Source: Octopus bimaculoides (taxonomy: Eukaryota). From it: a stretch of 44,088 bases of DNA. The translations under genes and the position numbers were made by a program. Each line of letters starts with the position of its first letter. Position 1 is the stretch's first letter. The DNA lies in assembly GCF_001194135.2 (NCBI RefSeq), contig NC_069004.1, positions 10,617,863-10,661,950 of the forward strand, written 5' to 3'. The notes under the pieces are model-generated. The model saw nothing but the letters and a program-made list of their open reading frames with translations. It ran no database searches and had not been told where the DNA came from. Positions 19,294 through 43,781 of the stretch are shown here, in pieces.

Positions 19294-19394
19294 TNNNNNN
19301 NNNNNNNNNNNNNNNNNNNNNNNNNNNNNNNNNNNNNNNNNNNNNNNNNNNNNNNNNNNNNNNNNNNNNNNNNNNNNNNNNNNNNNNNNNNNNN

Positions 19395-22300
19395 CGTTAG
19401 TTTGTTCGTTCGTTCATACGTACGTATGTACATATGTACCTACTTATGTACGTTCGTTCGTACGTTCGTTCGTACGTTCATTCGTTTGTTCGTTCGTACA
19501 CACCTACGTTCAATTCTTCGTTCGTTCGTTTTTTTTTCGTACTTACGTACGTTCGTTCAATCGTTCGTTCATTTGTTTGATCGTTTGTTTGTTCGATCGT
19601 TCGTTCGTTCTTACATACGTACTTACGACGTATATCCGTACATACGTACGGACGTTCGTTCGTTGCCTCGTTCGTTAGTTGTTTTGTTCTTTCGTACGTA
19701 CGTACGTACGTTCGTTCATTTGGTCGTTCGTTCGTTTCATTCGTTCGTTCGTTCGTTTCATTCGTTCGTTCGTCCGTACGTACGTTCGTTCGTTCATTCA
19801 TATATATGTACGTAGGAACATACGTACGTTCTCTTGTTCGTTCGTTCGTTCGTCCGTTCTTTCGTTACTTCGTTCGTTATTTCGCTCGTTCATTCGTTTT
19901 TTTGTTTCGTTCGATCGTTCATTCTTTCGTACGTTCGTTTGTTTCGTTCTTCCGTACGTACGTACGATCATTCGTTTGTTCCTTCGCACATACGTACGTT
20001 CGTTTGTTCGTTCGTTCGTTCTTTCGTACGTACGTACATTCTTTCGTTCAATCGTTCGTTCGTACGTACGTGCGTACGTTCGTTAGTTTGTTCGTTCGTT
20101 CGCTCGTTCGTTCGTACGTTCGTTCGATATTTCGTGCTGACGTACAAACTTACGGACGAACGTTCGTTCGTCCGTTCGATCGATCTTTCTTTCGCACGTA
20201 TGTACGTACTTTCGTTTGTTCTTTGGTTCGTTTGTTCGTTCGTTCTTTCGTTCATTGGTTCGTACGTGCGTACGTTCGTTAGTTTGTTCATTCGTTCATA
20301 CGTACGTACGTACATATGTACCTACTTACGAACAAAGAAATGAGCATACGTATGTACGAACGAAAGAACGATTGAACGAACAAACGAAAGAACGAACGAG
20401 CGAGCGAAAGATTGAAAGAACGAACGTACGTACGAAAAGAAAACGAACGAAAGAATGATCGAAAGTACGAACGATCGAACGAACGAACATAGGTATGTAT
20501 GTACGTACAAACGACCGAACGAACGTACGTAAGTAGGTACATATGAACGTACGAACAAAGTAACGAACGTACGCGCGTACGAACGGACGTACGTTCGGTC
20601 ATTCTTACGCACGTACATTCGTTCGTTCGTTCGTATTTAGTAACGCATGTACGTTCGTTCGTACTTATGAACGTACGTACGATCATTCGTTCTATCGTTC
20701 TTTCGTAAGTACGTACGTACGCACATCCGTTCGTTCGTTCTTTCGTTTGTTCGTTCGATCGTTCGTTAATTCGTTCGTTAGTTCGTATGTAGGTACCTCC
20801 TAACGTACGTTCGTTCATTTGTTCGTTCGTACGTACGTACTTACGTACGTACGTACATTTATTCTTTCGTTCGTTCGTACGTACGTTCGTTAGTTCGTAC
20901 GTTCGTTCGTTCGTTCATTCATACGTATATACATATGGAAATACGTACGTGCGATCTTTCATTCGTTCGTTCGTTCATTTCGTTGGTAAGCTCGTTCTTA
21001 CGTACGTGCGTACGAGTGAGCGAACGAACGATATGAACGAACTAACGAACGAATAAACGAAAGAAAGAACGAACGAATGAACGAACGAACGAACGTACGT
21101 CCGTACGAATGTACGGACGAACGAATGTACGGACGTACGAACGAAGGTACGTACGTACGAACGAACGAACGAACAAACAAATGAACAAAAGAACGAACGA
21201 ACGTACGTATGTTCCTACGTACATATATATGAACGAACGAACGTACGTACGTGCGGACGAACGAACGAACGTACGTACGGACGAACGAACGAATGAAACG
21301 AACGAACGAACGATCGAACAACCGAACGAACAAAGAAACGGACGAACGTACGTATGAACGGACGAACGAACGAACGTACGTAGGTATGAAAAAAAACGAA
21401 CGAACAAAGAATTGAACGTACGTATGTACGAACGAACGAACGAACAAACGAACGTACGTAAATAGGTACATATGTACGTACGTACGTATGAACAAACTAA
21501 CGAACGTACGCACGTACGTACGTATGAACGAAAGAACGTACGTACGAAAGAACGAAAGAACCAACGAACGAACAAACGAACCAACGAAAGAACGAACGAA
21601 TGCACGTACGGACGAACTAACGAATGAAACGAACGAACGGACGAGCAAATGAACGAACGTACGTGCGTACGTACGGAAGAAAGAAAGAACGAACGAACGT
21701 CTGTACGTATGCACGGATTTACGCACGTAAGTATGTATGTAAGAACGAACGAACGATCGAGCAAACGGACGAACGTACGTATATTCGTACTTACATACGT
21801 ATGAATGAACGAACGAACGAACGAGCGTGCGTATGTTCGTACGTAATTATGTATGAACGTACGAACGAACGAACGAATGTACGTACGTACGAACGAACGT
21901 ACGCAGGTACAATCGAACGTACGTACGTAAGAACGAATGATCGTACGTATGAACAAATGTTCGAAGGAAGGAAAGAACGTGCGTACGTAAGTAAGTTCGT
22001 ACGTACGAACGAATAAACGAAAGAAGGAACGTAATTACGAAAGAACGAAAGAACGAACGAATGAACGTACGTATGTTCCTACGTGCATATATATGAATGA
22101 CCGAACGAACGAACATACGTACGTACGAACGAACGTTGTCAGAACGAATGAAATGAACGAACGTACGTACGAAAGAACTAACGAACGAAGCATTGAACGA
22201 ACGAACGTACGTAGGTACGAAAAAAAGACGAACAAAGAATTGAACTTACGTATGTACGAACGAACAAACGAACGAACATACGAACGTACGTAAGTAGGTA

Positions 22301-25300
22301 CATATGTACGTACGTACGTATGAACGAATGAACAAATTAACGAACGTACGCACGTACGTACGTACGAAAGAAAGAACGAACAACCGAACCAACGAACAAA
22401 CAAACGAACGAACGAAAGAACAAACGTATGTACGTAGGCACGAAAGAAATATCGAACGAACGTACGAAAGAATGAACGAACAAACGTACGTGCGAAGGAA
22501 CGAACGAACAAACGAATGAATGATCGTACATACGTACGGAAGAACGAAACAAACGAAAGAGCGAAAGACCGAACGAAGTAACGAAAGAACGGACGAACGA
22601 ACGAACGAGAGAACGTACGTATGTTCCTACAGATATATATATGAATGAACGAACGAACGAACGTACATACGTACGTACGAACGAACGTATGTAAGAACGA
22701 ACGAACGTACGTACGGACGAACGAACGAATGAAACGAACGAACGACCAAATGAACGAACGTACGTACGTACGAAAGAAAGAAAGAACTAACGAACGAACG
22801 TCCGTACGTATATACCGATTTACGTACGTAAGTCCGTATGTAAGAACGAACGAACGATCGAACAAACGGACGAACGTACGTATATTCGTACTTACATATG
22901 TATGAATGAACGAACAAACAAGCGTTCGTATGTACTTATGTATGAATGAACGAACGTACGAACGTACGAATGTACGAACGAATGAATGTACGTACGTACG
23001 AACGAACGTACGTACGTACGAACGAACGTACGTACGTACGAAAGAATGATCATACGTATAAACAAATGATCGAAGGAAGGAAAGAGAGTGCGTACGTAAA
23101 TAAGTTCGTACGTACGAACGAATAAACGAAAGAAGGAACGTAATTACGAAAGAACGAACGAACGAATGAACGTACGTATGTTCCTACGTACATATATATG
23201 AATGAACGAACGAACGAACGAACGTACGAACGAACGTATGTCAGAACGAACGAAAGTACGGACGGACGAACGAAGAAAAACCGAACGAACAAAGAAATGA
23301 GCGTACGTTTGTACGAACGAACAACCGAACGAAAGAACGATCGAAAGTACGAACGATTGAACGAACGAACAAACGTACGTAGATACGAAAAAAAAACGAA
23401 CGAACAAAGAATTGAACGTACGTATGTACGAACGACAAACGAACGAACGAAAGAACAAACGAACGTACATAAGGAGATACATATGTACGTAAGTACGTAT
23501 GAACGAACCAACAAACTAACGAACTTACGCACGTACGTCCGAATGAACGTACGTACGTACGAACGAAAGAACGTACGTACGTACGAAGGAACGTACGAGC
23601 GAACGAACGAACAAACTAACGAACGTACACACGTCCGAACGAACGAACATAAGAAAAAATGAACGAACGATCGAACGAAAGAATGTACGTACGTACGAAA
23701 GAACGAACGAACGAACGAACAAACGTACGTACGTACTTGCGAAGGTACGAACGAACAAACGAACGAACGAACGAATGATCGTTCGTACGTACGGAAGAAC
23801 GAAACAAACAAACGAAAGAAAGAACGAAAGAACGAACGATCGAATGAAGCAAACAAACGAATGAACGAACGAGCGAAAGAACGAACGAAGTAACGAAAGA
23901 ATGGACGAACGAACGAAGGAGAGAACGATCGAGCAAACGAAAGAACGTACGTACGTACGTATGTATGAACAAACGATGGAACGAATGAACAAACAAACTT
24001 ACGTACATAGGAATGAACGCATGTGCGAACGAAACAAAGATCGAACGAAAAAAAAACCAACGAACGTACGTACATACATCCGTACGTAGGAACGAGCGAA
24101 CGAACGTACAAACGAAGGTACGTACGAACGACCGTACGTACGAATGAATGAACGTACGAACGATCGAACAAACGAACAAAGGAAAGATCGAAGTAACGAA
24201 TGAACGTACGTACTTACGTACGTAAGAACGAACGAACGAACATACGTATACGTATGTACGTAAGTACGAACGAACGAAGGTACGTACGTATGTACGTAAG
24301 TACGAACGAACGATCGAACGAACGAAAGAAAGAACGTAAGAACGTAATTACGTCCGTACGACGTAACAACGAAGGAGCGAACAAACAAATGAACGAACGA
24401 ACTAACGAACGAATGTACGCACGTACGTACGTAGAAACGAACGACCGTACGCACGTATGTACGTACGTACGAAACATGAAAGAAACGAATGAAAGAACGT
24501 AAGTACGTACGTAAGAACGAACGAACGACAGAATTAACGAACGAACGAAAGAAGGAACGAACAAATGTAGGTACATACGTACGAACGAACGGACAAGCAT
24601 ACGTTCGACGGAACAAACGAACGAACGAACGATTGAACGAACGAACGAACAAACGAAAGAACGAACGAAAGTACGTACGTACGAACGAACGAGCGAGCGA
24701 AAGATTGAAAGAACGAACGTACGTACGAAGAAAAACGAACGAACAAAGAAATGAACGTACGTATGTATGAACGAACAACCAAACGAAAGAACGATCGAAA
24801 GTACGAACGATTAAACGAACGAACGAACGTACGCAGGTACGAAAAAAAAACGAACGAACAAAGAATTGAACGTACGTATGTACGAACGACAAACGAACGA
24901 ACAAACGAACGTACATAAGGAGGTACATATGTGCGTACGTACGTATGAACGAACGAACAAACTAACGAACTTACGCACGAACGAAAGAACGTACGTACGT
25001 ACGTACGAAGGAACATACGAGCGAACGAACGAACAAACGTACGTACATACTTGCGAAGGTACGAACGAACAAACGAACGAACGAACGAATGATCGTACGG
25101 ACGTACGTACGGAAGAACGAAACAAACGAACGAACGAGCGAGTGAAAGATTGAAAGAACGAACGTACGTACGAAAAAAACGAACGCACAAAGAAATGAAC
25201 GTACGTTTGTACGAACGAACAACCGAACGAAAGAACGATCGAAAGTACGAACGATTGAACGAACGAACGAACGTACGTAGATACAAAAAAAACGAACGAA

Positions 25301-28300
25301 CAAAGAATTGAACGTACGTATGTACGAACGACAAACGAACGAACGAACGAACAAACGAACGTACATAATGAGGTACATATGTACGTACGTACGTATGAAC
25401 GAACGAACAAACTAACGAACTTACGCACGTACGTCCGAACGAACGAACGAACGTACGTACGTACGAAAGAAAGAACGTACGTACGTACGTACGAACGTAC
25501 GAAGGAAAGTACGAACGAACGAACGTACGAGCGAACGAAAGAACAAATTAACGAACGTAAGCACGTACGTACGAACGAACGTAAGAAAAAAATGAACGAC
25601 CGATTGAACGAAAGAATGTACGTACGTACGAAAGAACGAACGAACGAACAAACGTACGTACGTACTTGCGAAGGTACGTACGAACAAACGAATGAACGAA
25701 CGAATGATCGTACGTACGTACGGAAGAACGAAACAAACGAACGAAAGAAAGAACGAACGAACAAGAGAACGACCGAAAGACCGAACGATCAAACGAAGCA
25801 AACAAACGAATAAACGAACGAGCGAAAGAACAAATGAAGTAACGAAAGAATGGACGACCGAACGATGGAGAGAACGATCGAGCAAACGAAAGAACGTACG
25901 TACGTAAGTATGTACGAACAAACGATGGANNNNNNNNNNNNNNNNNNNNNNNNNNNNNNNNNNNNNNNNNNNNNNNNNNNNNNNNNNNNNNNNNNNNNNN
26001 NNNNNNNNNNNNNNNNNNNNNNNNNNNNNNNNNNNNNNNNNNNNNNNNNNNNNNNNNNNNNNNNNNNNNNNNNNNNNNNNNNNNNNNNNNNNNNNNNNNN
26101 NNNNNNNNNNNNNNNNNNNNNNNNNNNNNNNNNNNNNNNNNNNNNNNNNNNNNNNNNNNNNNNNNNNNNNNNNTACGTACGAACGAACGAATTTAAGGAA
26201 AGAACGACCAAAAGAACGAAAGAACATGAAAGAAACGAATGAAAGAACGTAAGAACGTACGTAAGAACGAACGAACGACAGAATTAAAGAACGAACGAAA
26301 GAAGGAACGAACGATCGAACAAAAGAATTAACGAACAAATGTAGGCACATAATTACGAACGAACGAACAAGCGTACGTACGACGGAACAAACGAACGAAC
26401 GAATGATTGAACGAACGAAAGAACAAACGAAAGAACGAACGAAAGTACGTACGTACGAACGAACGAGCGACCGAAAGATTGAAAGAACGAACGTACTTAC
26501 GAAAAAAAACCGAACGCACAAAGAAATGAACGTACGTTTGTACGAACGAAAGAACGATCGAAAGTACGAACAATTGAACGAACGACCGATTGAACGAAAG
26601 AATGTACGTACGTACGAAATAACGAACGAACGAACAAACGTACGTACGTACTTGCGAAGGTACGAACGAACAAACGAACGAACGAACGAATTATCGTACG
26701 TAACTACGGAAGAAAGAAACAAACGAACGAACGAAAGAATGAACGAACGAAAGAACAAACAATCGAACGAAGCAAACAAACGAATGAACGAACGAACGAA
26801 AGAACGGACGAAGTAGCGAAAGAATGGACGAACGAACGAACGAGAGAACGATCGAGCAAAGGAAAGAACGTACGTACGTACGTATGTACGAACAAACGAA
26901 GGAACAAATGAACAAACAAACTTACGTACGTAGGAACGAACGCAGGTGTGAACGTAAGAAAGATCGAACGAAAAAACAAACGAACGTACGAACGAACGAA
27001 CGTATGTACAAACATCCGTACGTAGGAACGAGCGAACGAGCGAACGAACGTATGTACGTACGAACGAAAGGACTAACGTACATCCATACATACGAACGAA
27101 CGAATTTAAGGAAAGAACGAACACACGGACGAAAGAACGATTGAACATATGTACGTACATACGTAAGAATGAACGTACGAACGAGCGTACGTACGAACGA
27201 CCGTACGTACGTACGAATGAATGAACGTACGTACGTACGAACGAACGTATGAACGTACGTACGTACGAACGAACGTATGAATAAACGAAGGAAAGAAAAA
27301 AGTAACGAATGAACGTACGTACTCACGTACGTGAGAACGAACGAAAGAACGTACGAAGGAACGAGCGAACGAACGAACAAACTAACGAACGTACGCACGT
27401 ACGTACGAACGAACGAACGTACGAATGAATGAACGGACGATTGAACGAAAGAATGTACGTACGTACGAAAGAACGAACGAATGAATGAACGAACAAGCGT
27501 ACGTACATACGTACGAAGTTAGGAACGAACAAACGAACGAACGAACGAATTATCGTACGTACGAAGTAGCGAAAGAATGGACGAACGAACGAACGAGAGA
27601 ACGATCGAGCAAAGGAAAGAACGTACGTACGTATGTACGAACAAACGAAGGAACAAATGAACAAACAAACTTACATACGTAGGAACGAACGCAGGTGTGA
27701 ACGAAAGAAAGAACGAACGAAGAAACAAACGAACGTACGTACGAACGAACGAACGTACGTACGTACGTACGTACGAACGAAAGAACTAAAGTACATCCAT
27801 ACATACGAACGAACGAATTTAAGGAAAGAACGAACATACGGACGAAAGAATGATTGAACATATGTACGTACATACGTAAGAATGAACGTACGAACGAAAG
27901 AAAGAACGAACGAACAAGAGAACGAACGAACGAAAGAACGAGCGAACGAACAAACTAACGAACGTAAGCACGTACGTACGAACGAACGTAAGAAAAAAAA
28001 TGAACGACCGATTGAACGAAAGAATGTACGTACGTACGAAAGAACGAACGAAACGAACAAACGTACGTACGTACTTGCGAAGGTGCGAACGAACAAACGA
28101 ACGAACGAACGTACCTACGAACGAACAAATGAACGAAAGAACGTACGAAGGAACGAGCGAACGAACGATCAAACTAACGAACGAACGTACGAATGAATGA
28201 ACGAACGATTGAACGAAAGAATGTACGTACGTAAGAAAGAACGAACGAATGAACGAACAAGCGTACGTACATACGTACGAAGATACGAACGAACAAACGA

Positions 28301-31300
28301 ACGAACGAACGAACGAATTATCGTACGGACCTTCGGAAGAAAGAAACAAACGAACGAACGAAAAAATGAACGAACGAAAGAACGAACAATCGAACGAAGC
28401 AAATGAACGAACGAACGAAAAAACGGACGAAGTAGCGAAAGAATGGACGAAAGAACGAACGAGAGAACGATCGAGCAAAGGAAAGAACGTACGTACGTAC
28501 GTACGTATGTACGAACAAACGAAGGAACAAATGAACAAACAAACTTACGTACGTAGGAACGAACGCAGGTGTGAACGAAAGAAAGATCGAACGAAAAAAC
28601 AAACGAACGTACGTACGAACGAACGTATGTACAAACTTCCGTACGTAGGAACGAGCGAACGAGCGAACGAGCGAACGAACGTACGTACGTACGTACGAAC
28701 GAAAGGACTAACGAAAATCCATACATACGAACGAACGAATTTAAGGAAAGAACGAACAAACGGACGAAAGAACGATTGAACATATGTACGTACATACGTA
28801 AGAATGAACTACGAACGAGCGTAAGTACGTACGAACGATCAAACGAACGAACGAATGTAAGAACGAAGTAACGAATGAACGTACGTAATTTTGTACGTAA
28901 GAACGAACGAATGGACGAACGAACGATGGAGAGAACGATCGAGCAAACGAAAGAACGTACGTACGTAAGTATGTACGAACAAACGATGGAACGAATGAAC
29001 AAACAAACTTACGTACGTAGGAATGAACGCATGTGCGAACGAAAGAAAGATCGAACGAAAAAACAAACGAACGTACGTACGAACGAACGAATGTGCGTAC
29101 ATACATCCGTACGTAGGAACGAGCGAACGAACGTACGAACGAAAGACCTAACGTACATCCATACATACGAACAAACGAAGGAAAGAAAGAAGTAACGAAT
29201 GAACGTACGTACTCACGTACGTGAGAACGAACGAACGAACGAACGTACGTACGAACTAACAAATGAACGAAAGAACGTACGAAGGAACGAGCGAACGAAC
29301 GAACAAACTAACGAACGTACGCACGTACGAACGAACGAACGTACGGATGAATGAACGAACGATTGAACGAAAGAATGTACGTACGTACGAAAGAACGAAC
29401 GAACGAATGAACGAACAAGCGTACGTACATACGTACGAAGATACGAACGAACAAACGAACGAACGAAAGAATAAACGAACGAAAGAACGAACAATCGAAC
29501 GAAGCAAACAAACGAATGAACGACCGAACGAAAGAATGGACGAAGTAGCGAAAGAATAGACGAACGAACGAACGAGAGAACGATCGAGCAAAGGAAAGAA
29601 CGTACGTACGTACGTATTTACGAACGAACGAACGAGAGAACGATCGAGCAAAGGAAAGAACGTACGTACGTACGTATGTACGAACAAATGAAGGAACAAA
29701 TGAACAAACAAACTTACGTACGTAGGAACGAACGCAGGTGTGAACGAAAGAAAGATCGAACGAAAAAACAAACGAACGTACGTACATACATCCGTACGTA
29801 GAAACGAGCGAAGGAGCGAACGAACGTACGTACGAACGAAAGGACTAACTGCGAAGTTACGAACGAACAAACGGACGAACGAACGAATGATCGTACGTAC
29901 GTTCGGAAGAACGAACGAAGTAACGAAAGAATGGACGAACGAACGATGGAGAGAACGATCGAGCAAACGAAAGAACGTAAGTACGTACGTATGTACGAAC
30001 AAACGATGGAACGTATGTACGTACATACGTAAGAATGAACGTACGAACGAGCGGACGTACGAACGACCGTACGTACGTACGAATGAATGAACGAACGATT
30101 GAACGAAAGAATGTACGTACGTACGAAAGAACGAACAAGCGTACGTACATACGTACGAAGATACGAACGAACAAGCGAACGAACGAACGAATTATCGTAG
30201 GTACCTACGGAAGAAAGAAACAAACGAACGAACGAAAGAATGAACGAACGAAAGAACGAACAATCGAACGAAGCAAACAAACGAATGAACGAACGAGAGA
30301 ACGATCGAGCAAAGGAAAGTACGTACGTACGTATGTACGAACAAACGAAGGAACAAATGAACAAACAAACTTACCTACGTAGGAACGAACGCAGGTGTGA
30401 ACGAAAGAAAGATCGAACGAAAAAACAAACGAACGTACGTACATACATCCGTACGTAGGAACGAGTGAACGAGCGAACGAACGTACGTACGAACGAAAGG
30501 ACGAACAATAGAACGAAGCAAACAAACGAATGAACGAACGAACGAAAGAACGGACGAAGTAGCGAAAGAATGGACGAACGAAGGAACGTACATACATACA
30601 TCCGTACGTAGGAACGAGCGAACGAGCGAACGAACGTACGTGCGTACGTACGTACGTACGTATGTACGAACAAACGAAGGAACAAATGAACAAACAAACT
30701 TACGTACGTAGGAACGAACGCAGGTGTGAACGAAAGAAAGATCGAACGAAAAAACAAACGAACGTACGTACGAACGAACGAACGTACGTACATACATCCG
30801 TACGTAGGAACGAGCGAACGAACGTACGTACTNNNNNNNNNNNNNNNNNNNNNNNNNNNNNNNNNNNNNNNNNNNNNNNNNNNNNNNNNNNNGAAAGGAC
30901 AAACAATCGAACGAAGCAAACAAACGAATGAACGAACGAACGAAAGAACGGACGAAGTAGCGAAAGAATGGACGAACGAACGAACGAGCGAGAGAACGAT
31001 CGAGCAAAGGAAAGAACGTACGTACGTACGTACGTACGTACGTACGTATGTACGAACAAACGAAGGAACAAATGAACAAACTTACGTACGTAGGAACGAA
31101 CGCAGGTGTGAACGAAAGAAAGATCGAACGAAAAAACAAACGAACGTACGTACGAACGAACGAACGTACGTACATACATCCGTACGTAGGAACGAGCGAA
31201 CGAACGTACGTACTTACGAACGAAAGAACTAACGTACATCCATACATACGAACGAACGAATTTAAGGAAAGAACGAATAAACGGACGAAAGAACGATTGA

Positions 31301-34300
31301 ACATAGGTACGTACATACGTAAGAATGAACTACGAACGAGCGTACGTACGAACGAACGATCGAACGAACGAACGAAGGTAAGAACGAAGTAACGAATGAA
31401 CGTACGTAATTTTGTACGTAAGAACGAACAGACGAATGATGGTACGTACCTACGGAAGAACGAAACAAATGAACGAAAGAAATAACGAACGAACAAGAGA
31501 ACAAACGAACGAAGGAACGAACGATCGAACGAAGCAAACAAACGAATGAACGAACGAGCGAAAGAACAAACGAAGTAACGAAGGAATGGACGAACGAACG
31601 ATGGAGAGAACGATCGAGCAAACGAAAGAACGTACGTACGTAAGTATGTACGAACAAACGATGGAACGAATGAACAAACAAACTTACGTACGTAGGAATG
31701 AACGCATGTGCGAACGAAAGAAAGATCGAACGAAAAAACAAACGAACGTACGTACGAACAAACGAATGTGCGTATATACATCCGTACGTAGGAACGAGCG
31801 AACGAACGTACGAACGAAAGACCTAACGTACATCCATACATACGAACGAACGAATTTAAGGAAAGAACGAACAAACGAACGAAAGAACGATTGAACGTAT
31901 GTACGTACATACGTGAGAATGAACGTACGAACGAGCGTACGTACGAACGACCGTACGTACGTACGAATGAATGAACATACGTACGTACGAACGATCGAAT
32001 GAACAAACGAAGGAGAGAAAGAAGTAACGAATGAACGTACGTACTCACGTACGTGCGAGCGAAAGAACGAACGAATGTACGTACGAACGAACAAATGAAC
32101 GAAAGAACGTACGAAGGAACGAGCGAACGAACGAACAAACTAACGAACCTAGGCACGTACGTACGAACGAACGAACGTACGAATGAATGAACGAACGATT
32201 GAACGAAAGAATGTACGTACGTACGAAAGAACGAACGAACGAATGAACGAACAAGCGTACGTACATACGTACGAAGATACGAACGAACAAACGAACGAAT
32301 GAATGAATTATCGTACGTACCTACGGAAGAAAGAAACAAACGAACGAACGAAAGAATAAACGAACGAAAGAACGAACAATCGAACGAAGCAAACAAACGA
32401 AAGAACGGACGAAGTAGCGAAAGAATGGACGAACGAGAGAACGATCGAGCAAAGGAAAGAACGTACGTACGTACGTATGTACGAACAAACGAAGGAACAA
32501 ATGAACAAACAAACTTACGTACGTAGGAACGAACGCAGGTGTGAACGAAAGAAAGATCGAACGAAAAAACAAACAAACGTACGTACGAACGAACGAACGT
32601 ACGTACATACATCCGTACGTAGGAACGAGCGAAGAAGCGAACGAACGTACGTACGTACGAACGAAAGGACTAACTGCGAAGTTACGAACGAACAAACGAA
32701 CGAACGAACGAATGATCGTACGTACGTACGGAAGAACGAACGAAGTAACGAAAGAATGGACGAACGAACGATGGAGAGAACGATCGATGAAACGAAAGAA
32801 CTACGTACGAACAAACGATGGAACGTATGTACGTACATACGTAAGAATGAACGTACGAACGAGCGGACGTACGAACGACCGTACGTACGTACGAATAAAT
32901 GAACGTACGTACGTACGAACGTACGAATGAACAAACCGAAGGAAAGAAAGAAGTAACGAATGAACGTACGTCCTCACGTACGTGAGACCGAACGAACAAA
33001 CGAACGAACGTACGTACGAACGAACAAATGAACGAAAGAACGTACGAAGGAACGAGCGAACGAACGAACAAACTAACGAACGTACGCACGTACGTACGAA
33101 CGAACGTAAGAAAAAAATGAACGACCGATTGAACGAAAGAATGTACGTACGTACGAAAGAACGAACGAACGAACGTACCTACGAACGAACAAATGAACGA
33201 AAGAACGTATGAAGGAACGAGCGAACGAACGAACAAACCAACGAACGTACGCACGTAAGTACAAACGAACGAACGTACGAACGAATGAACGAACGATTGA
33301 ACGAAAGAATGTACGTACGTACGAAAGAACGAATGAACGAACAAGCGTACGTACATACGTACGAAGATACGAAAGAACAAACGAACGAACGAACGAATTA
33401 TCGTACGTACCTACGGAAGAAAGAAACAAACGAAAGAATGAACGAACGAAAGAACGAACAATCGAACGAAACAAACAAACGAACGACCGTACGTACGTAC
33501 GAATAAATGAACGTACGAATAAATGAACGTACGTACGTACGAACGTACGAATGTACAAACCGAAGGAAAGAAAGAAGTAACGAATGAACGTACGTACTCA
33601 CGTACGTGAGACCGGACGAACAAACGAACGAACGTACGTACGAATGAACGAAAGAACGTACGACGGAACGAGCGAACGAACGAACAAACTAACGAACGTA
33701 CGCACGTATGTACGAACGAACGTAAGAAAATAATGAACGACCGATTGAACGAAAGAATGTACGTACGTACGAAAGAACGAACGAACGAATGAACGAACAA
33801 GCGTACGTACATACGTACGAAAATACGAAAGAACAAACGAACGAACGAACGGACGAACGGATTATCGTACGTACCTACGGAAGAAAGAAACAAACGAAAG
33901 AACGAAAGAATGAACGAACGTACGAAAGAACGGACGAAGTAGCGAAAGAATGGACGAACGAACGAACGAGAGAACGATCGAGCAAAGGAAAGAACATACG
34001 CACGTACGTATGTACGAACAAACGAAGGAACAAATGAACAAACAAACTTACGTACGTAGGAACGAACGCAGGTGTGAACGAGAGAAAGATCGAACGAAAA
34101 AACAAACGAACGTACGTACATATATCCGTACGTAGGAACGAGCGAACGAACGTACGTACGTACGAACGAAAGGACAAACAATCAAACGAACGAACGAATT
34201 ATCGTACGTACCTACGGAAGAAAGAAACAAACGAACGAACGAAAGAATGAATGAACGAAATAACGAACAATCGAACGAAGCAAACAAACGAATGAACGAA

Positions 34301-37300
34301 CGAACGAAAGAACGGACGAAGTAGCGAAAGAATGGACGAACAAACGAACGAGAGAACGATCGAGCAAAGTAAAGAACGTACGTACGTACGTATGTACGAA
34401 CAAACGAAGGAACAAATGAACAAACAAACTTAGGTACGTAGGAACGAACGCAGGTGTGAACGAATGAAAGATCGAACGAAAAAACAAACGAACGAAGGAA
34501 CGTAGTACATACATCCGTACGTAGGAACGAGCGAACGAGCGAACGAACGTACGTACGTACGAACGAAAGGACAAACAATCGAACGAAGCAAACAATCGAA
34601 TGAACGACCTAACGAACGAACGGATGAAGTAGCGAAAGAATGGACGAACGAACGAACGAGAGAACGATCGAGCAAAGGAAAGAACGTACGTACGCACGTA
34701 TGTACGAAGAAACGAAGGAACAAATGAACAAACAAACTTACGTACGTAGGAACGAACGCAGGTGTGAACGAAAGAAAGATCGAACGAAAAAACAAACGAA
34801 CGTACGTACGAACGAACGAACGTACGTACATACATCCGTACGTAGGAACAAGCGAACGAGCGAACGAACGTACGTACGTACGAATGAAAGGACGAACAAT
34901 CGAACGAAAGAAGGATTGAACGTATGTAAGTACATACGTAAGAATGAACGTACGAACGACCGTACGTACGTACGAATGAATGAACATACGTACGTACGAA
35001 CGATCGAATGAACAAACGAAGAAAAGAAAGAAGTAACGAATGAACGTACGTACTCACGTACGTGAGAACGAACGAACAAATGAACGAAAGAACGTACGAA
35101 GGAACGAGCGAACGAACGAACATACATCCGTACGTAGGAACGAGCGAACGAACGTACGTACGTACGAACGAATGGACTAACGTACATCCACACATACGAA
35201 CGAACGAACTTAAGGAAAGAACGAACAAACGGACGAAAGAACGATTGAACATATGTACGTACATACGTAAGAATGAACGTACGAACGAGCGTGCGTACGA
35301 ACAAACGATCGAACGAACGAACGAAGGTAAGAACGAAGTAAATAATGAACGAACGTAATTTTGTACGTAAGAAAGAACGATCGAATGATGGTACGTACGT
35401 ACGGAAGATCGAAACAAAGGAACGAAAGAAAGAACGAACGAACAAGAGAACGAACGAACGTAAGCACGTACGTACGAACGAACGTAAGAAAAAAATGAAC
35501 GGCCGATTGAACGAAAGAATTAGGTACGTACGTACTTGCGAAGGTACGAACGAACAAACGAACGAACGAACGAACGAACGTACCTACGAACGAACAAATG
35601 AACGAAAGAACGTACGAAGGAACGAGCGAACGAACGAACAAACTAACGAATGTACGCACGTACGTACGAACGAACGAACGTACGAATGAATGAACGAACG
35701 ATTGAACGAAAGAATGTACGTACGTACGAATATACGAACGAACAAACGAACGAACGAACGAATTATCATACGTACCTACGGAAGAAAGAAACAAACGAAC
35801 GAACGAACGAATGAACGTACGAACGAGAGGACGTACGAACGACCGTACGGACGTACGAATGAATGAACGTACGTACGTACGAACGATCGACTGAACAAAC
35901 GAAGGAAAGAAAGAAGTAACGAATGAATGTACGTACTCACGTGCGTGAGTACGAACGAACGAACGAACGAACAAACTAACAAACGTACGCACGTACGTAC
36001 GAACGAACGAACGTACGAATGAATGAACGAACGATTGAACGAAAGAATGTACGTACGTACGAAAGAACGAACGAACGAATGAACGAACAAACGTACGTAC
36101 ATACGTTCGAAGATACGAGCGAACAAACGAACGAATGAACGAATTATCGTACGTACCTACGGAAGAAAGAAAGAAACGAACGAACGAAAGAATGAACGAA
36201 CGAAAGAACGAACAATCGAACGAAGCAAACAAACGAATGAACGAACGAACGAAAGAACGGACGAAGTAGCGAAAGAATGGACGAACGAACGAACGAGAGA
36301 ACGATCGAGCAAAGGAAAGAACGTACGTACGTATGTATGTCCGAACAAACGAAGGAACAAATGAACAAACAAACTTACGTACGTAGGAACGAACGCATGT
36401 GTGAACGAATGAAAGATCGAACGAAAAAACAATCGAACATACGTACGAACGAACGAACGTACGTACATACATCCGTACGTAGGAACAAGCGAACGAGCGA
36501 ACGAACGTACGTACGTACGAATGAAAGGACGAACAATCGAACGAAGCAAACAAACGAATGAACGAACGAACGAAAGAACGGACGAAGTAGCGAAAGAATG
36601 GACGAACGAACGAACGAGAGAACGATCGAGGNNNNNNNNNNNNNNNNNNNNNNNNNNNNNNNNNNNNNNNNNNNNNNNNNNNNNNNNNNNNNNNNNNNNN
36701 NNNNNNNNNNNNNNNNNNNNNNNNNNNNNNNNNNNNNNNNNNNNNNNNNNNNNNNNNNNNNNNNNNNNNNNNNNNNNNNNNNNNNNNNNNNNNNNNNNNN
36801 NNNNNNNNNNNNNNNNNNNNNNNNNNNNNNNNNNNNNNNNNNNNNNNNNNATACGTACGAACGAACGAACGTACGTACATACATCCGTACGTAGGAACAA
36901 GCGAACGAGCGAACGAACGTACGTACGTACGAATGAAAGGACGAACAATCGAACGAAGCAAACAAACGAATGAACGAACGAACGAAAGAACGGACGAAGT
37001 AGCGAAAGAATGGACGAACGAACGAACGAGAGAACGATCGAGGAAAGGAAAGAGCGTACGTACGTACGTATGTACGAACAAACGAAGGAACAAATGAACA
37101 AACAAACTTACGTACGTAGGAACGAACGCAGGTGTGAACGAAAGGAGGATCGAACGAAAAAACAAGCGAACGTACGTACGAACGAACGAACGTACGTACA
37201 TACATCCGTACGCAGGAACGAGCGAACGAACGTACTTACGTACGAAAGAAAGGACTAATTGCGAAGTTACGAACGAACAAACGAACGAACGAACGAATGA

Positions 37301-40300
37301 TAGTACGTACGTACGGAAGAACGAACGAAGTAACGAAAGAATGGAAGAACGAACGATGGAGAGAACAATCGAGCAAACGAAAGAACGTACGTACGTACGT
37401 ATGTACGAACAAACGATGGAACGTATGTACATACATACGTAAGAATGAACGCACGAACGAGCGTACGTACGAACAACCGTACGTACGAATGAATGAACGT
37501 ACGTACGTACGAAAGATCGAATGAACAAACGAAGGAAAGAAAGAAGTAACGAATGAACGTTCGTACTCACGTACGTGAGAACGAACGAACGAACGAACGT
37601 ACCTACGAACGAACAAATGAACGAAAGAACGTACGAAGGAACGAGCGAACGAACGAACAAACTAACGAACGTACGCACGTACGTACGAACGAACGAACGA
37701 ACGAACGAAAGAAAGAACGAACGAACGTACGTGCGTAAGAATGGCCGTTCGTACGTACGCGCGTACGTTCGTTACTTTGTTTGTTTGTTCGTTAGTTCGT
37801 TCTTTCATTTGTTTGTTCGTTCCTTCGTTGTTACGTACGTACGGACGTATTTGCGTTCGTTCGTACGTAGGTACTTATATACGTACCTACGTACGTAATT
37901 ACGTTCGTTCGTTCTTACGTTCTTTCTTTCGTTCGTTCGAATTTACGTACGTACGTACGTAACTTCGTTCGTTCGTACCTACGTACATATGTACGTACGT
38001 TCGTACTTTCGTTCGTTCGATCGTTCGTACGTACGTAGGTTCGTTCGCTCTTTCGCTCGTTCCTACGTANNNNNNNNNNNNNNNNNNNNNNNNNNNNNNN
38101 NNNNNNNNNNNNNNNNNNNNNNNNNNNNNNNNNNNNNNNNNNNNNNNNNNNNNNNNNNNNNNNNNNNNNTCATTCGTTCGCTCGTTCGTTCGTACGTTCG
38201 TTCGATATTTCTTCCGCACATACGTACGTACGTTTGTTCTTTCGTTCGTTTGTTCGTTGGTTCCTTTGTTCATTCGTTGGTTCGTTTGTTCGTTCGTTCT
38301 TTCGTACGTACTTACGTAAGGGCGTACGTTCGTTAGTTTGTTCATTCGTTCATACGTACGTACGTACATATGTACCTACTTACGTACGTTCGTTTCTTCA
38401 TTCGTTCGTTCCTTCTTTCGTACATACATACGTCCAATTTGTTCGTTCGTTTTTTGTCGTACCTACGTACGTTCTTTCGTTCAATCGTTCGTTCGTTCGT
38501 TCGTTCGTTCTTTCGTTCTACGTACGTTCGTCCGTTTCATTGTTCGTTCGTTTGTTCGGTCGTTCGTTGGTTCTTACTTACGTACGTAAATCCGTACGGA
38601 CGTTCGTTCGTTGCCTCGTTCGTTAGTTATTTCGTTCTTTCGTACGTACGTACGTTCGTTCGTTAGTTCGTTCATTCATATATATGTACCTAGAAACATA
38701 CGTTCGTTCGTTCGTTCGTTCGTTCGTTCGTAATTACGTTTCTTCTTTCGTTTATTCGTTTGTACTTACGAACTTACTTATGTACGCACGTTCTTTCCTT
38801 CCTTCGAGCCTTTGTTCATACGTACGTTCGTTCGTTTGTACGTACGTAGGTTCGTTCGTACATTCGTACGTAAGTACGTTCGTTCGTTCGTTCATTTATA
38901 CATATGTACGTACGAACATACGCACGCTCGTTCGTTCGTTCATTCATAGATATGTACGTACGAATATACGTACGTTCGTTCGTTCATTCGTTCGTTCGTT
39001 CATTCGTTCGTTCGTTCATTCGTTCGTTCGTTCTTTCGTTTGTTCGTTCGTTAGTTCGTTCATATCGTTCGTTCGCTCACACATACGTACGTACGTACGT
39101 ACTAACGAGCTTACCAACGGAATGAACGAACGAACGAACGAAAGAACCAAAGTACGAACGATCGCACGTACGTACGTACGTACGAACAAACGAACGAACG
39201 AAAGAGTGAATGTACGTACGTACGTAAGTACATACGTACGATCGAACAAACGAACGAACGAACGTAAGTACGTACGAACTAACGAAAGAATGAACGAACG
39301 ATCGAACGAACAAACGAAAGAACGTACTAACGAACGATCGAAATGACGAACAATAGAACAAACAAACCAACAAAGGAACGAACGTTCGTACGGCCGAACG
39401 TACGTACGATCGAACGTACGAAACTAACGATGGAACAAACGAACGAATGAACGAAACAAACAAATGAACGAACTATCGACCGAACGAACGAACAAACGAA
39501 CGAAAGAATGAATGAACGAACGAACGAACAATAGAACGAATGAACGAAAGAAAGAACGAACGAACGTACGTGCGTAAGAATGACCGAACGTACGTACGCG
39601 CGTACGCTCATTAGTTTGTTCGTGTGTTCGTTCGTTCGTACGTACATATGTACCTACTTACGTACGTTCGTTCGGTCGTTTGTACATACATACATTCCTA
39701 CGTTCGTTTGTTCGATCGTTCGTATTTTCGATCGTTCTTTCGTTCGTTGTTGTTCGTTCATTTCTTTGTTCGTTCGTTTTGTTTTCGTACGTACGTTCGT
39801 TCTTTCAATCTTTCGCTCGCTCGTTCGTTCGTACGTACGTAATTTCGTTCGTTCTTTCGTTTGTTCGTTCGTTCGTTGGTTCAATCGTTCGTTCGTTCCT
39901 ACGTACGTTCGTTCGTTTGTTCCGTCGTACGTACGCTTGTTCGTTCGTTCGAACGTATGTACCTACATTTGTTCGTTAATTCGTTTGTTCGATCGTTCGT
40001 TCCTTCTTTCGTTCGTTCGTTAATTCTTTCGTTCGTTCGTTCTTACGTACGTACTTACGTTCTTTCATTCGTTTCTTTCATGTTTCGTACGTACGTTCAT
40101 ACGTGCGTACGTTCATACGTGCGTACGTTCGTTCGTTCCTACGTACGTACGTGCGTACATTCGTTCGTTAGTTCGTTCGTTCATTTGTTTGTTCGTTCCT
40201 TCGTTGTTACGTACGTAGGTACTTATATACGTACCTACGTACGTTCGTTTGTTCTTACGTTCGTTCGTTCTTACGTTCTTTCTTTCGTTCGTTCGTAATT

Positions 40301-43300
40301 ACGTACGTACATACGTACCTTCGTTCTTTCGTTCGTTCGTTGGTTTTTACGTACGTAAGTACGTAGGTTCATTCTTTACTTCGTTCTTTCCTTCGTTCGT
40401 TCGTTCGATCGTTCGTACGTACGTACATTCATTCATTCGTACGTACGTACGCTCGTTCGTACGTAAATTCTTACGTATGTACGTACATACGTTCAATCGT
40501 TCTTTCCTTCGTTTGTTCGTTCGTTTTTTAATTTCGTTCGTTCGTACGTACGGACGTACGTTAGTTCTTTCGTTCGTACGTACGTACGTTCGTTCGACCG
40601 TTCGTACGTACGGATGTTAGTTCGTTCGATAGTTTCGTACGTTTGATCGTACGAACGAACGAGCGAACGAACGAACACACTAACGAACGTAAGCACGTAC
40701 GTACGAACGAACGTAAGAAAAAATGAACGACCGATTGAACGAAAGAATGTACGTACGTACGAAAGAACGAACGAACGAACGAACAAACGTACGTCCGTAC
40801 TTGCAAAGGTACGAACGAACAAACGAACGAACGAACGAATGATCGTACGTACGTACGGAAGAACGAAACAAACGAACGAAAGAAAGAACGAACGAACAAA
40901 AGAACGAAAGAACGAAAGAACGAACAAACGAACGAAAGAACGATTGAACGTATGTACGTACATACGTAAGAATGAACGTACAAACGAGCGTACGTACGAA
41001 CGAACTACGTACGTACGAATGAATGAACGTACGTACGTACGAACGATCGAATGAACGAACGAACTAACGAACGAATGTACGCACGTACGTACGTAGGAAC
41101 GAACGAACGTACGCACGTATGTACGTACGAAACATGAAAGAAACGAATGAAAGAACGTAAGTACGTACGTAAGAACGAACGAACGAACGACAGAAGGAAC
41201 GAACGATCGAACAAAAGAATTAACGAACAAATGTAGGTATATACGTACGAACGAACGGACATGCGTACGTACGACGGAACAAACGAACGAACGAACGATT
41301 GAACGAATGAAATACCAAACGAAAGTACGTACGTACGAACGAACGAGCGAGCGAAAGATTGAAAGAAAGATCGTACGTACGAAGAAAAACGAACGAACAA
41401 ACGTACGTACGTACTTGCGAAGGTACGAACGAACAAACGAACGAACGAACGAATGATCGTACGTACGTACGAAAGAACGAAACAAACGAACGAAAGAAAG
41501 AACGAACGAACAAGAGAACGAAAGAACGAACTAACGAACGATCGAAAGGACGAACAATAGAACAAACGAACCAACAAAAGAACGAACGTTCGTGCGGCCG
41601 AACGTACGTACGATCGAACGTACGAAACTAACGAAGGAACAAACGAACGAACGAACGAAACAAACAAATGAACGAACTATCGACCGAACGAACGAACAAA
41701 CGAACGAAAGAATGAATGAACGAACGAGCGAACAAAAGAACGAATGAACAATTGAAAGAAGATCAAACGTACGTACGTAAGTACATATGTACGTAGGTAC
41801 GTAGGTACGTACGAAAGAGTGAATGTACGTATGTACGTACCTACGGACAAAAGAGCGAACGAATGAACAAACTAACGACCGAACGAACGAACGAAAGGAC
41901 AACCGAACGCACGAATGGATGTGCGTACGTACGTACGTAGGAAAGAACGATAGAACGAATGAACGTACGTACGTTCTTAAGTAAGTACGTCCGTTCATAA
42001 GTAAGTACGTACGAACGATCCAACGAACGAACGTACGTTACTAAATACGAACGAACGAACGAACGAACGAACGAAAGAAAGAACGAACGAACGTACGTGC
42101 GTAAGAATGACCGAACGTACGTACGTTCGTACGTACGCGCGTACGCTCATTAGTTTNNNNNNNNNNGTAAGAATGACCGAACGTACGTACGTTCGTACGT
42201 ACGCGCGTACGCTCATTAGTTTGTTCGTGTGTTCGTTCGTTCGTACGTACATATGTACCTACTTACGTACGTGCGTTCGGTAGTTTGTACATACATACAT
42301 ACCTACGTTCGTTCGTTCGATCGTTCGTACTTTCGATCGTTCTTTCGTTCGTTTGTTCGTTCGTACATACATACGTTCATTTCTTTGTTCGTTCGTTTTT
42401 TTTCGTACGTACGTTCGTTCTTTCAATCTTTCGCTCGCTCGTTCGTTCGTGCGTACGTAATTTCGTTCGTTCTTTCGTTTGTTCGTTCGTTGGTTCTATC
42501 GTTCGTTCGTTCCTACGTACGTTCGTTCGTTCGTTTGTTCCGTCGTACGTATGCTTGTTCGTTCGTTCGTACGTATGTACCTACATTTGTTCGTTAATTC
42601 GTTTGTTCGATCGTTCGTTCCTTCTTTCGTTCGTTCATTCTTACGTACGTACTTACGTTCTTTCATTCGTTTCTTTCATGTTTCGTACGTACGTTCATAC
42701 GTGCGTACGTTCGTTCGTTCCTACGTACGTACGTGCATACATTCGTTCGTTAGTTCGTTCGCTCATTTGTTTGTTCGTTCCTTCGTTGTTACGTACGTAG
42801 GTACTTATATACGTACCTATGTACGTTCGTTCGTACGTACGTAATTACGTTCGTTCGTTCTTACGTTCTTTCGTTCGTTCGTTCGTACGTAGGTTTATTC
42901 TTTACTTCGTTCTTTCCTTCGTTCGTTCGTTCGATCGTTCGTACGTACGTACGTTCATTCATTCGTACGTACGTACGCTCGTTCGTACGTAAATTCTTAC
43001 GTATGTACGTACATACGTTCAATCGTTCTTTCCTTCGTTTGTTCGTTCGTTTTTTAATTTCGTTCGTTCGTACGTACGGATGTACGTTAGTTCTTTCGTT
43101 CGTACGTACGTACGTTCGTTCGACCGTTCGTACGTACGGATGTATGTACGTACGATCGTTCGTTTGTTCTTTCGTTTGCACATGCGTTCGTTCCTACGTA
43201 CGTACGTTTGTTCATTCGTTCCTTCGTTTGTTCGTGCGTACGTACGTACATTCTTTCGTTTGCTCGATCGTTCTCTCGTTCGTTCGTTCGTAAATTCTTT

Positions 43301-43781
43301 CGTTACTTCGTTCGTTCTTTCGGTCGTTCGTTTGTTTGTTTCGTTCGATCGTTCGTTCTTTTTTCGTTCGTTCGTTTGTTTCGTTCTTCGGTATGTACGT
43401 ACGATCATTCGTTCGTTTGTTCGTTCGTTTGTTCGTTCTTTTGTACGTAGGTACATTCTTTCGTTCAATCGTTCGTTCATTCTTTCGTACGTTCGTTCGT
43501 TCGTACGTACGTGCGTACATTCGTTAATTTGTTCGTTCGTTCGTTCGTACGTACGTACGTACGTTCGTTCGTTCGTGCGTAAGTTCGTTACTTTGTTCGT
43601 TTGTTCATACGTACGTACGTACATATGTACCTACTTATGCACCTTCGTTCGTTCGTTCGTACATACGTACGTTCAATTCTTTGTTCGTTGGGGTTTTTTT
43701 CGTACCTACGAACGAACAAAGAAACGGACGAATGTACGGACGAACGTACAGACGAACGTACGGACGAACGTACAGACGAAC
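19395..43781. repeat. 24.4-kb complex (AACG/TACG) tetranucleotide-based satellite with internal inversions
   Basis: Nearly all sequence parses into AACG, TACG and single-substitution variants; alternating (TTCG)- and (CGAA)-oriented blocks; five internal gaps. Confidence 0.98.

What the first reader, a model, noticed from the sequence alone, without database searches (positions are those of the whole stretch)
19395..43781. 24-kb 'two-word' CpG satellite built from AACG and TACG
Seen: more than half the window is a 4-nt-register array in which an asymmetric word (AACG/CGTT) and a self-complementary word (from GTAC/ACGT) are interleaved in long, reproducible patterns, with a CpG roughly every 4 bp. 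The flanking DNA is AT-rich and CpG-poor. It is neither a plain microsatellite nor a fixed-monomer satellite: specific word orders recur over hundreds of bp. Inference: it may be a lineage-specific chromatin domain (giant CpG island, heterochromatin or centromere-related block). I do not recognise it as a described family.
Basis: partly seen in the sequence, partly recalled or inferred. Interest (0 to 1): 0.85.

Follow-up and report, generated by a model that had tools for sequence, protein, structure and literature searches.

The report
Degenerate AACG/TACG CpG-rich satellite block
About 24 kb of this window really is a decayed four-letter repeat built mainly from AACG and TACG, enlarged by copying and flipping blocks of a few hundred bases; it is unusually rich in CpG but is most likely ordinary junk-type satellite DNA, not a proven chromatin domain.

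Summary
Positions 19395-43781 (23,754 read bases) carry 3,548 CpGs: 14.9 per 100 bp, observed/expected 3.26, against 1.4 per 100 bp and 0.38 in the left flank. 96% of CpG-to-CpG spacings are multiples of 4. AACG (33%) and TACG (18%) are the main words, and most other words are one substitution away.

It is not a pure microsatellite, because the longest perfect run is 28 bp. It is not a fixed-monomer satellite, because there is no period beyond 4. Word orders of 0.2-0.7 kb recur at 85-99% identity far more often than in Markov controls.

The array has a recently amplified core (26.2-37.7 kb), older edges, and ten segments of alternating strand joined by only three junction types.

Caveats:
- Two internal gaps are probably unmerged contig overlaps.
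- The left boundary is itself a gap.
- The assembly is a gap-rich draft.

Best reading: a compound tetranucleotide tract that decayed, then grew by unequal exchange and by inversions at hairpin-forming TACG tracts. CpG survives because octopus repeats are reported to be unmethylated.

Centromere, heterochromatin or CpG-island function is untested. The closest analogue is the GATA/GACA Bkm satellite.

The parts
19295..19394 (.). 100-N assembly gap that forms the left boundary of the array. The unique side ends in (TA)n.
   Evidence: The junction between flank and array was not sequenced; linkage rests on scaffolding only.
19395..43781 (.). Whole AACG/TACG array: 23,754 read bases plus 633 N.
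   Evidence: CpG 14.9 per 100 bp, o/e 3.26, 96% of CpG spacings are multiples of 4.
19395..20296 (-). Segment with AACG on the minus strand (CGTT on top); old, diverged left edge.
   Evidence: Strand segmentation. Few paralogous matches, about 80% identity.
20359..20585 (+). Short AACG-on-top segment.
20592..20996 (-). CGTT-on-top segment.
21023..37727 (+). Main 16.7-kb AACG-on-top segment.
   Evidence: AT skew +0.5 to +0.65.
26174..37727 (+). Recently amplified core, a mosaic of 0.2-0.7 kb blocks.
   Evidence: 5-17 paralogous matches per position at 88-98.6% identity; 11 copies at 94% or more (plus one at 89%) of a 152-bp module, at spacings of 311-2226 bp.
30669..30820 (+). Reference copy of the 152-bp landmark module.
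   Evidence: Other copies at 94% or more start at 26891, 27640, 28514, 28978, 31055, 31653, 32484, 34710, 36344 and 37077.
37746..39073 (-). CGTT-on-top segment (right edge domain).
39104..39590 (+). AACG-on-top segment.
39629..40643 (-). CGTT-on-top segment; a direct paralogue of 42194-42887 (88.7% over 735 bp).
40654..42183 (+). AACG-on-top segment.
42190..43689 (-). CGTT-on-top segment. Its right end repeats the sequence at the left start of the array (19395-19540 resembles 43590-43700).
43711..43781 (+). Terminal 24-bp-period stretch (GACGAACGTACGGACGAACGTACA, 2.3 copies) ending the array.
37700..37770 (.). Convergent (+|-) strand-switch junction. Copies of the same junction lie at about 20585, 39590 and 42183.
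   Evidence: shared core ACGTGCGTAAGAATGACCGAACGTACGTACG...CGCGTACGCTCATTAGTTTGTTCG. As single-stranded DNA it folds at -39 kcal/mol, z = -6.1.
20960..21060 (.). Divergent (-|+) junction. The junction at 39073/39104 is its reverse complement.
   Evidence: 87% identity over about 180 columns. The 39030-39150 copy forms a hairpin with z = -6.5.
36439..37043 (.). Probable assembly artefact: 193 bp (36439-36631), then 219 N, then the identical 193 bp (36851-37043).
   Evidence: 100% identity; the merged sequence aligns colinearly with paralogue 34185-34893 (672 of 701 aligned columns).
42101..42222 (.). Probable assembly artefact: 56 bp, then 10 N, then the identical 56 bp. Contains a strand-switch junction.
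43782..44088 (+). Unique right flank with promoter-like features: two CACGTGAT motifs, a CCAAT motif, TATAAATA, and an ATG at 44046 whose reading frame stays open to the window end.
   Evidence: GC 48%, CpG o/e 1.17. Only 14 codons are visible, so the gene could not be identified.

Best explanation
This is a non-coding, satellite-like block with no required cellular function. It is a compound tetranucleotide tract that decayed and was then re-amplified.

Proposed history; the steps are inferred, the anatomy is shown:
1. An (AACG)n microsatellite grew by replication slippage.
2. A first-base A-to-T change produced TACG. Tandem TACG is self-complementary and alternates purine and pyrimidine. Both words spread by slippage into a compound tract.
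3. Substitutions and small indels accumulated. The substitutions include CpG-to-TpG/CpA words (AATG, AACA, TATG, TACA) and AAAG. Indels occur about once per 180 bp. Together they broke the tract, so slippage largely stopped and unique word orders were created.
4. Unequal exchange or template switching between misaligned tracts duplicated blocks of 0.2-0.7 kb. This was most recent and frequent in the core (26.2-37.7 kb).
5. Hairpin- or cruciform-forming TACG tracts caused a few inversions. Later duplications copied those breakpoints.

CpG stays dense for two reasons: the blocks are renewed by duplication, and repeats in octopus are reported to be essentially unmethylated.
For: - Period-4 register: lag-4 identity 0.70, and 96% of CpG spacings are multiples of 4.
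- Words are AACG and TACG plus one-substitution derivatives. Perfect runs reach at most 28 bp.
- There are 131 off-register tokens among 5,752. Register coherence is lost within about 200-300 bp.
- Long paralogous blocks are far more frequent than in Markov nulls and lie at irregular offsets with no fixed period.
- The core has 5-17 paralogues per position at 88-98.6% identity; the edges have 0-2 at 80-89%. From general knowledge, this core/edge pattern is what unequal exchange produces in tandem arrays.
- Nine strand switches reduce to three junction sequences, found as diverged copies in both orientations.
- TACG runs and junctions fold as strong DNA hairpins, z = -3 to -6.5.
- Between paralogues, CpG-site transitions are only about 2.5 times non-CpG transitions.
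- Fewer than 10% of octopus CpGs are methylated, and methylation is absent from transposons and other repeats (10.1101/2021.11.18.469068).
- O. bimaculoides has the most SSRs of 719 eukaryotes surveyed (PMC6387519).
- Small two-word tracts of the same kind exist elsewhere (L008).
- The long ORFs are a by-product of stop-free repeat frames and match only low-complexity peptides.
Against: - Only one locus in a gap-rich draft is visible, so copy number, chromosomal position and true length are unknown.
- The left flank is CpG-depleted (o/e 0.38). CpG therefore does decay in this genome, and lack of methylation alone does not explain an o/e of 3.26.
- Word composition and CpG density are almost identical in old edges and young core. 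This could reflect constraint or biased conversion rather than neutrality.
- The array ends about 265 bp upstream of a promoter-like region with an ATG, so a regulatory or chromatin role is not excluded.
- The source organism was not verified.
Confidence: 0.6

Rival explanations
1. The array is a functional chromatin platform. In this reading, 24 kb of unmethylated CpG at 15 per 100 bp recruits CxxC-type or Polycomb/Trithorax factors, or acts as a boundary, and so influences the adjacent promoter-like gene start.
For: - Extreme CpG density.
- Uniform composition in old and young domains.
- The array ends about 265 bp before a promoter-like region with an ATG.
- Octopus repeats are reported to be unmethylated.
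- From general knowledge of vertebrates, unmethylated CpG-dense DNA is enough to recruit such factors.
Against: - No chromatin data are available.
- GC is 43%, and the sequence is low-complexity with ongoing duplication, inversion and decay, as expected for unconstrained DNA.
- The neighbouring gene is unidentified.
- CpG-island-type regulation has not been shown in cephalopods in the papers read.
Confidence: 0.12
2. The array is one copy of a genome-wide satellite family that marks centromeres, pericentric heterochromatin or a specialised (for example sex) chromosome.
For: - Satellite-like organisation with a homogenised core and diverged edges.
- Hairpin-forming palindromic tracts.
- The analogous two-word GATA/GACA Bkm repeats accumulate in W-chromosome heterochromatin of snakes (PMC5793158).
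- Draft assemblies usually collapse such arrays.
Against: - Only 24 kb is seen, scaffolded between SINE-rich DNA and a promoter-like unique flank.
- No other AACG/TACG tract occurs in the 19-kb left flank.
- No copy-number or cytological data are available.
- No paper in the library describes such a cephalopod satellite.
Confidence: 0.1
3. The array is largely an assembly artefact. Short-read contigs from one or several much shorter or simpler repeats were mis-joined, duplicated or flipped by the assembler or scaffolder.
For: - Sixteen gaps in 44 kb.
- Two internal gaps are flanked by 100%-identical sequence.
- The left boundary is a gap.
- Six of the nine strand switches are crowded into the last 6 kb, which also contains two gaps.
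Against: - Gap-free stretches of 4-6.5 kb lie wholly inside the array.
- Paralogous blocks and junction copies differ by 1-20% instead of being identical, as real diverged copies do.
- Eight of the nine strand switches lie in contiguous sequence. The ninth lies 17 bp beyond a gap, in sequence that is duplicated on both sides of it.
Confidence: 0.08

Closest known systems
Bkm (banded krait minor) satellite: interspersed (GATA)n and (GACA)n
   Same: Both are two-word tetranucleotide satellites whose words differ by a single base. The words are interleaved within a larger repeat, forming long arrays rather than a pure microsatellite (PMC5793158; further detail is from memory).
   Different: - The Bkm words contain no CpG and neither is self-complementary.
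- Bkm is dispersed and concentrated on heterochromatic sex chromosomes.
- Here only one locus is known, the words are AACG/TACG, CpG density is extreme and the array contains inversions.
- There is no sequence relationship.
Compound or interrupted microsatellites and 'cryptically simple' sequence (generic (AACG)n and (ACGT)n simple-repeat classes)
   Same: - Same motifs and 4-bp register, with slippage as the generating process.
- Sub-kb AACG/TACG compound tracts occur in unrelated contigs (L008).
- Perfect AACG tracts up to 4.7 kb and ACGT tracts up to 2.1 kb are on record in other animals.
   Different: - This array is 24 kb at only about 70% purity, and its longest perfect run is 28 bp.
- Growth is now by duplication of 0.2-0.7 kb blocks and by inversion, not by unit slippage.
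Classical satellite DNA with higher-order repeats (for example alpha satellite)
   Same: It is a long tandem array with a homogenised centre and diverged edges, paralogous blocks at 85-99% identity, and probable growth by unequal exchange.
   Different: - There is no fixed monomer or higher-order period; autocorrelation is flat beyond about 300 bp.
- Module spacing is irregular.
- Abundance and chromosomal location are unknown.
Vertebrate CpG islands
   Same: It is long, and its CpG o/e is far above 0.6. It is probably unmethylated, inferred from the octopus methylome paper. It lies next to a promoter-like region.
   Different: - GC is 43%, below 50%.
- It is tandem low-complexity sequence rather than unique promoter DNA.
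- It is roughly 20 times longer than a typical island.
- Its methylation and chromatin state have not been measured.

Membership tests
Tetranucleotide microsatellite (SSR) | Head-to-tail repetition of a 1-6 bp unit | tested here: met
   TRF period 4; lag-4 identity 0.70; 96% of CpG spacings are multiples of 4.
Tetranucleotide microsatellite (SSR) | A single motif at high purity | tested here: not met
   There are two main words plus derivatives. TRF reports 69-71% matches. The longest perfect run is 7 units.
Tetranucleotide microsatellite (SSR) | Short tract, usually well under 1 kb | tested here: not met
   About 24 kb, with gap-free stretches of up to 6.5 kb inside the array.
Satellite DNA with a fixed monomer or higher-order repeat | A constant monomer or higher-order period | tested here: not met
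   No autocorrelation peak from 200 to 8000 bp. The 152-bp module recurs at spacings of 311-2226 bp.
Satellite DNA (broad sense) | Long non-coding tandem array with sequence homogenisation among copies | tested here: met
   The + segment has 155 self-matches of at least 200 bp, against 0-9 in null models. Core copies are 88-98.6% identical. No coding or RNA-family signal.
Satellite DNA (broad sense) | High genomic copy number and heterochromatic location | not testable with these tools
   No cephalopod genome, reads or cytology were accessible. The metagenome scan found only unrelated tracts of 0.5 kb or less.
CpG island (Gardiner-Garden and Frommer criteria, from memory) | Length over 200 bp and CpG o/e above 0.6 | tested here: met
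   o/e 3.26 over 23.7 kb.
CpG island (Gardiner-Garden and Frommer criteria, from memory) | G+C above 50% | tested here: not met
   GC is 42.9%.
CpG island (functional sense) | Unmethylated in the germline and marked as a promoter | not testable with these tools
   The only evidence is indirect: octopus repeats are reported to be unmethylated, and the array has one CCGG site, so RRBS would not sample it.
Centromeric satellite | CENP-A association; one large array per chromosome | not testable with these tools
   No data. The visible context (SINE-rich flank, promoter-like flank) does not suggest a centromere.
Bkm-type two-word simple satellite | Two tetranucleotide words differing by one base, interleaved in long arrays | tested here: met
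   AACG 33% and TACG 18% of words. A-type runs average 5.2 words and T-type runs 2.7 words, interleaved throughout.
Bkm-type two-word simple satellite | GATA/GACA sequence and enrichment on sex chromosomes | tested here: not met
   The words are different, so this is an analogue, not a member. Chromosomal location is unknown.

The most novel reading that the evidence does not exclude
AACG/TACG arrays could be an undescribed, octopod-specific satellite family. In this reading, large unmethylated CpG-dense blocks that can form hairpins or Z-DNA mark a specialised chromatin compartment: centromeric, sex-chromosomal, or Polycomb/CxxC-bound domains next to genes. The locus seen here would be one collapsed copy.
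Probability: 0.1. Interest if true: 0.75.

Novelty: new member of a known kind. Interest (0 to 1): 0.4.

Why it matters
If the array is real at this size, it is one of the most CpG-dense long tracts one could find: 15 CpG per 100 bp over 24 kb, in a genome whose surrounding DNA is CpG-poor.

That makes it useful in three ways:
- It is a natural test of whether cephalopods leave repeats unmethylated.
- It tests whether dense unmethylated CpG alone attracts chromatin marks in an invertebrate.
- It shows how a palindromic microsatellite word drives inversions inside arrays.

Practically, it flags assembly errors (two spurious gaps). It also flags a region that MspI-based methylation assays cannot see, because it has one CCGG site against 1,044 ACGT sites.

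If it proves to be a single neutral locus, it is an ordinary though striking satellite.

Tried and rejected
- Fixed long period or higher-order repeat: base autocorrelation to 8 kb shows none.
- Chance recurrence of word orders: rejected by word shuffles and order 1-3 Markov controls.
- Coding potential: the long ORFs (up to 401 aa without N) only reflect stop-free frames of CGTT/CGTA. The protein search gave only weak low-complexity hits, the best at 43% identity, to short RSFV/HSFI-type tracts in unrelated eukaryotes. This route therefore gave no cephalopod relatives.
- RNA families, tRNA genes and telomere repeats: none found.
- Perfect large palindromes at strand switches: arms are only 70-79% complementary, and junctions are shared diverged copies rather than fold-back artefacts.
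- Metagenome scan for a 24-nt two-word signature: 12 contigs, with tracts of 0.5 kb or less.
- Literature: nine searches found no description of an AACG/TACG array or of any octopus satellite family.
- A fuzzy-regex module search timed out and was replaced by BLAST.
- Source organism: could not be verified. ARAGORN found no tRNA-like head.


Full report

Yes. From 19395 to 43781 the sequence changes abruptly.
- CpG rises from 4-24 per kb in the left flank to 114-163 per kb in the array.
- Over 23,754 read bases there are 3,548 CpGs: 14.9 per 100 bp, o/e 3.26, GC 42.9%. 75% of all C lie in CpG.
- The 14.8 kb of read left flank has 1.40 CpG per 100 bp, o/e 0.38, GC 38.2%.
- 96% of successive CpG spacings are multiples of four: 4 bp in 60%, 8 bp in 21% and 12 bp in 10%.
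- TRF calls period 4 at 69-71% matches across the block.
- Read in register, the words are AACG 33.4% and TACG 18.3%. One-substitution derivatives follow: AAAG 6.1%, AACA 5.7%, AATG 5.1%, then ATCG, TATG, TACA, AGCG and others. 131 of 5,752 tokens are off register.

**2. Neither a microsatellite nor a fixed-monomer satellite.**

- Perfect runs are short, at most 7 units or 28 bp.
- Base autocorrelation is 0.70 at lag 4 and decays to background within 200-300 bp. This matches one register slip per roughly 180 bp. There is no peak up to 8 kb.
- Long word orders do recur. The 16.7-kb + segment has 155 self-matches of at least 200 bp, 72 of them at 90% identity or more, the longest 732 bp. Word shuffles and order 1-3 word Markov chains give 0-9 such matches and none at 90%.
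- A 152-bp module occurs 11 times at 94% identity or more, plus once at 89%, at spacings of 311 to 2226 bp.

**3. Domain structure.**

- The core (26.2-37.7 kb) has 5-17 paralogous matches per position at 88-98.6% identity.
- The edges (19.4-23.4 kb and 37.7-43.8 kb) have 0-2 matches at 80-89%.
- A landmark, TACATATGTACCTACTTA, marks the edge domains and is absent from 25.4-37.7 kb.
- Composition is nonetheless nearly constant everywhere: CpG 14.6-15.3 per 100 bp, AACG 31.5-33.9% and TACG 17.3-19.7% of bases.

**4. Strand switches.**

The asymmetric word flips strand nine times, giving ten segments. The switches reduce to three junction sequences.
- The four convergent junctions (about 20585, 37727, 39590 and 42183) share one core.
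- The divergent junction at 20996 is the reverse complement of the one at 39073, at 87% identity.
- A third type occurs at 20296 and 43689. The divergent junction at 40643 resembles none of the three types.

Because the copies are diverged, they look like a few old inversions later propagated by block duplication, not assembler fold-backs. TACG repeats are self-complementary and alternate pyrimidine and purine, as the sequence shows directly. As single-stranded DNA, a TACG run and the junction regions fold into long hairpins with z-scores from -3.0 to -6.5 against dinucleotide shuffles.

**5. Gaps (the scan program's request).**

- 36632-36850: the 193 bp on the left are 100% identical to the 193 bp on the right. 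After merging, the region aligns colinearly with its paralogue 34185-34893, with 672 matches in 701 aligned columns. Keeping the duplicate leaves 206 unaligned residues.
- 42157-42166: 56 bp are duplicated identically across the gap, and merging again improves the alignment.
- Both gaps are therefore probably unmerged contig overlaps, making the array about 0.48 kb shorter. Alternatively they hide whole units of about 0.32 kb.
- 30833-30892 sits between 90%-identical tandem paralogues.
- 25930-26173 and 38070-38169 keep the same strand on both sides.
- Register across gaps says nothing, since the register also drifts in contiguous sequence.
- The left end of the array is a 100-N gap (19295-19394), so adjacency to the left flank rests on scaffolding only.
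- With 16 gaps in 44 kb, the assembly is a draft and the true length is uncertain in both directions.

**6. What it is not.**

- No Rfam family, tRNA gene or telomere repeat is present.
- The long ORFs exist because CGTT/CGTA frames lack stop codons. A database search returned only low-complexity RSFV/HSFI tracts from unrelated eukaryotes.

**7. Surroundings.**

- The left flank is AT-rich, CpG-poor and full of gaps. It carries at least six copies of a roughly 400-bp SINE-like repeat.
I could not verify the organism.
- The right flank (43782-44088) is unique, with GC 48% and CpG o/e 1.17. It has two CACGTGAT motifs, a CCAAT motif, TATAAATA, and an ATG at 44046 whose frame stays open to the window end. 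The array therefore abuts what looks like a gene start.

**8. Most likely explanation (confidence about 0.6; steps inferred, anatomy shown).**

1. An (AACG)n tract expanded by slippage.
2. An A-to-T change created the palindromic word TACG, and both words spread into a compound tract.
3. Substitutions and indels interrupted the tract.
4. Growth then continued by unequal exchange or template switching of blocks of a few hundred bp, mainly in the core.
5. Hairpin-prone TACG tracts seeded a few inversions.

CpG decay is visible but mild. TpG/CpA-type words make up about 15% of words. Between paralogues, CpG-site transitions are only about 2.5 times non-CpG transitions. This fits the report that fewer than 10% of octopus CpGs are methylated and that methylation is absent from transposons and other repeats (10.1101/2021.11.18.469068). 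It also fits the exceptional SSR load of O. bimaculoides: 7.6 million SSRs covering 6.45% of the genome, the highest count of 719 eukaryotes (PMC6387519).

Points against this reading:
- The flank's o/e of 0.38 shows that CpG does decay in this genome.
- Composition is uniform across old and young domains.
- The array lies next to a promoter-like region.

**9. Rivals.**

- A CpG-platform chromatin function (about 0.12).
- Membership of a genome-wide centromeric or heterochromatic family (about 0.10).
- A largely artefactual assembly (about 0.08).

None can be settled without long reads, copy-number data and epigenomic data.

**10. Comparison with known things.**

- The closest analogue is the Bkm satellite, in which GATA and GACA are interleaved within a larger repeat on snake W chromosomes (PMC5793158). 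It has the same two-word, one-base-difference logic but different words, no CpG and no palindromic word.
- The motifs themselves are generic SSR classes. Perfect AACG tracts up to 4.7 kb (an ant) and ACGT tracts up to 2.1 kb (carp) are on record.
- A roughly 400-bp AACG/TACG compound tract occurs in an unrelated metagenome contig (L008).
- The array meets the CpG-island o/e criterion but fails the GC criterion.
- No paper in the searchable library describes this array or any octopus satellite family.

**11. Verdict.**

The array is a real, striking, but probably neutral satellite-like block, and a new member of the class of compound-microsatellite-derived satellites. Interest is moderate (0.4). 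It would rise sharply if the family proved to be genome-wide and tied to a chromatin state.

Noticed in passing
window 170-559, 2855-3262, 5593-5983, 10245-10438, 18272-18454, 6139-6235, 14952-15056: At least six full or partial copies of a roughly 400-bp dispersed SINE-like repeat at 84-94% identity, in both orientations, in the 19-kb left flank. ARAGORN finds no tRNA-like head.
   Followed up: partly
window 43782-44088: A CpG-containing, promoter-like unique flank (two CACGTGAT motifs, a CCAAT motif, TATAAATA) with an ATG at 44046 (MTSAVATSATRVYY...) that runs off the window. The gene could not be identified.
   Followed up: partly
window 36439-37043 and 42101-42222: Assembly gaps flanked by 100%-identical sequence (193 bp and 56 bp). 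These are probably unmerged contig overlaps.
   Followed up: yes
window 6396-6491: A perfect 13-bp tandem repeat (ACCAGATGGCTAC, 7.4 copies) running straight into a 586-N gap, so the array is probably longer than shown.
   Followed up: no
window 16130-16386: A G/T-rich tandem repeat with a 96-bp period (2.6 copies, 88% matches) and internal 31- and 44-bp sub-periods.
   Followed up: no
window 19295-19394 and 38070-38169: Two gaps are exactly 100 N, the conventional placeholder for unknown length, whereas most other gaps have irregular, estimated sizes. One of the two is the left boundary of the array.
   Followed up: partly
L008 280-620 (metagenome contig OFHQ01036762.1): A roughly 400-bp compound (CGTT)n/(CGTA)n tract with the same two-word structure in an unrelated, unidentified contig. 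This shows the motif pair arises independently at small scale.
   Followed up: partly
window 19395-43781: AAAG (C-to-A at word position 3; 351 words) is as common as the deamination-type words AATG and AACA, while the complementary change AACT is rare (69 words). This strand-asymmetric excess is probably inflated by block duplication or AAAG slippage, but it is not explained.
   Followed up: no
window 1-19294: The left flank has a CpG o/e of only 0.38, although octopus intergenic DNA and repeats are reported to be unmethylated. The cause of this depletion is unexplained.
   Followed up: no
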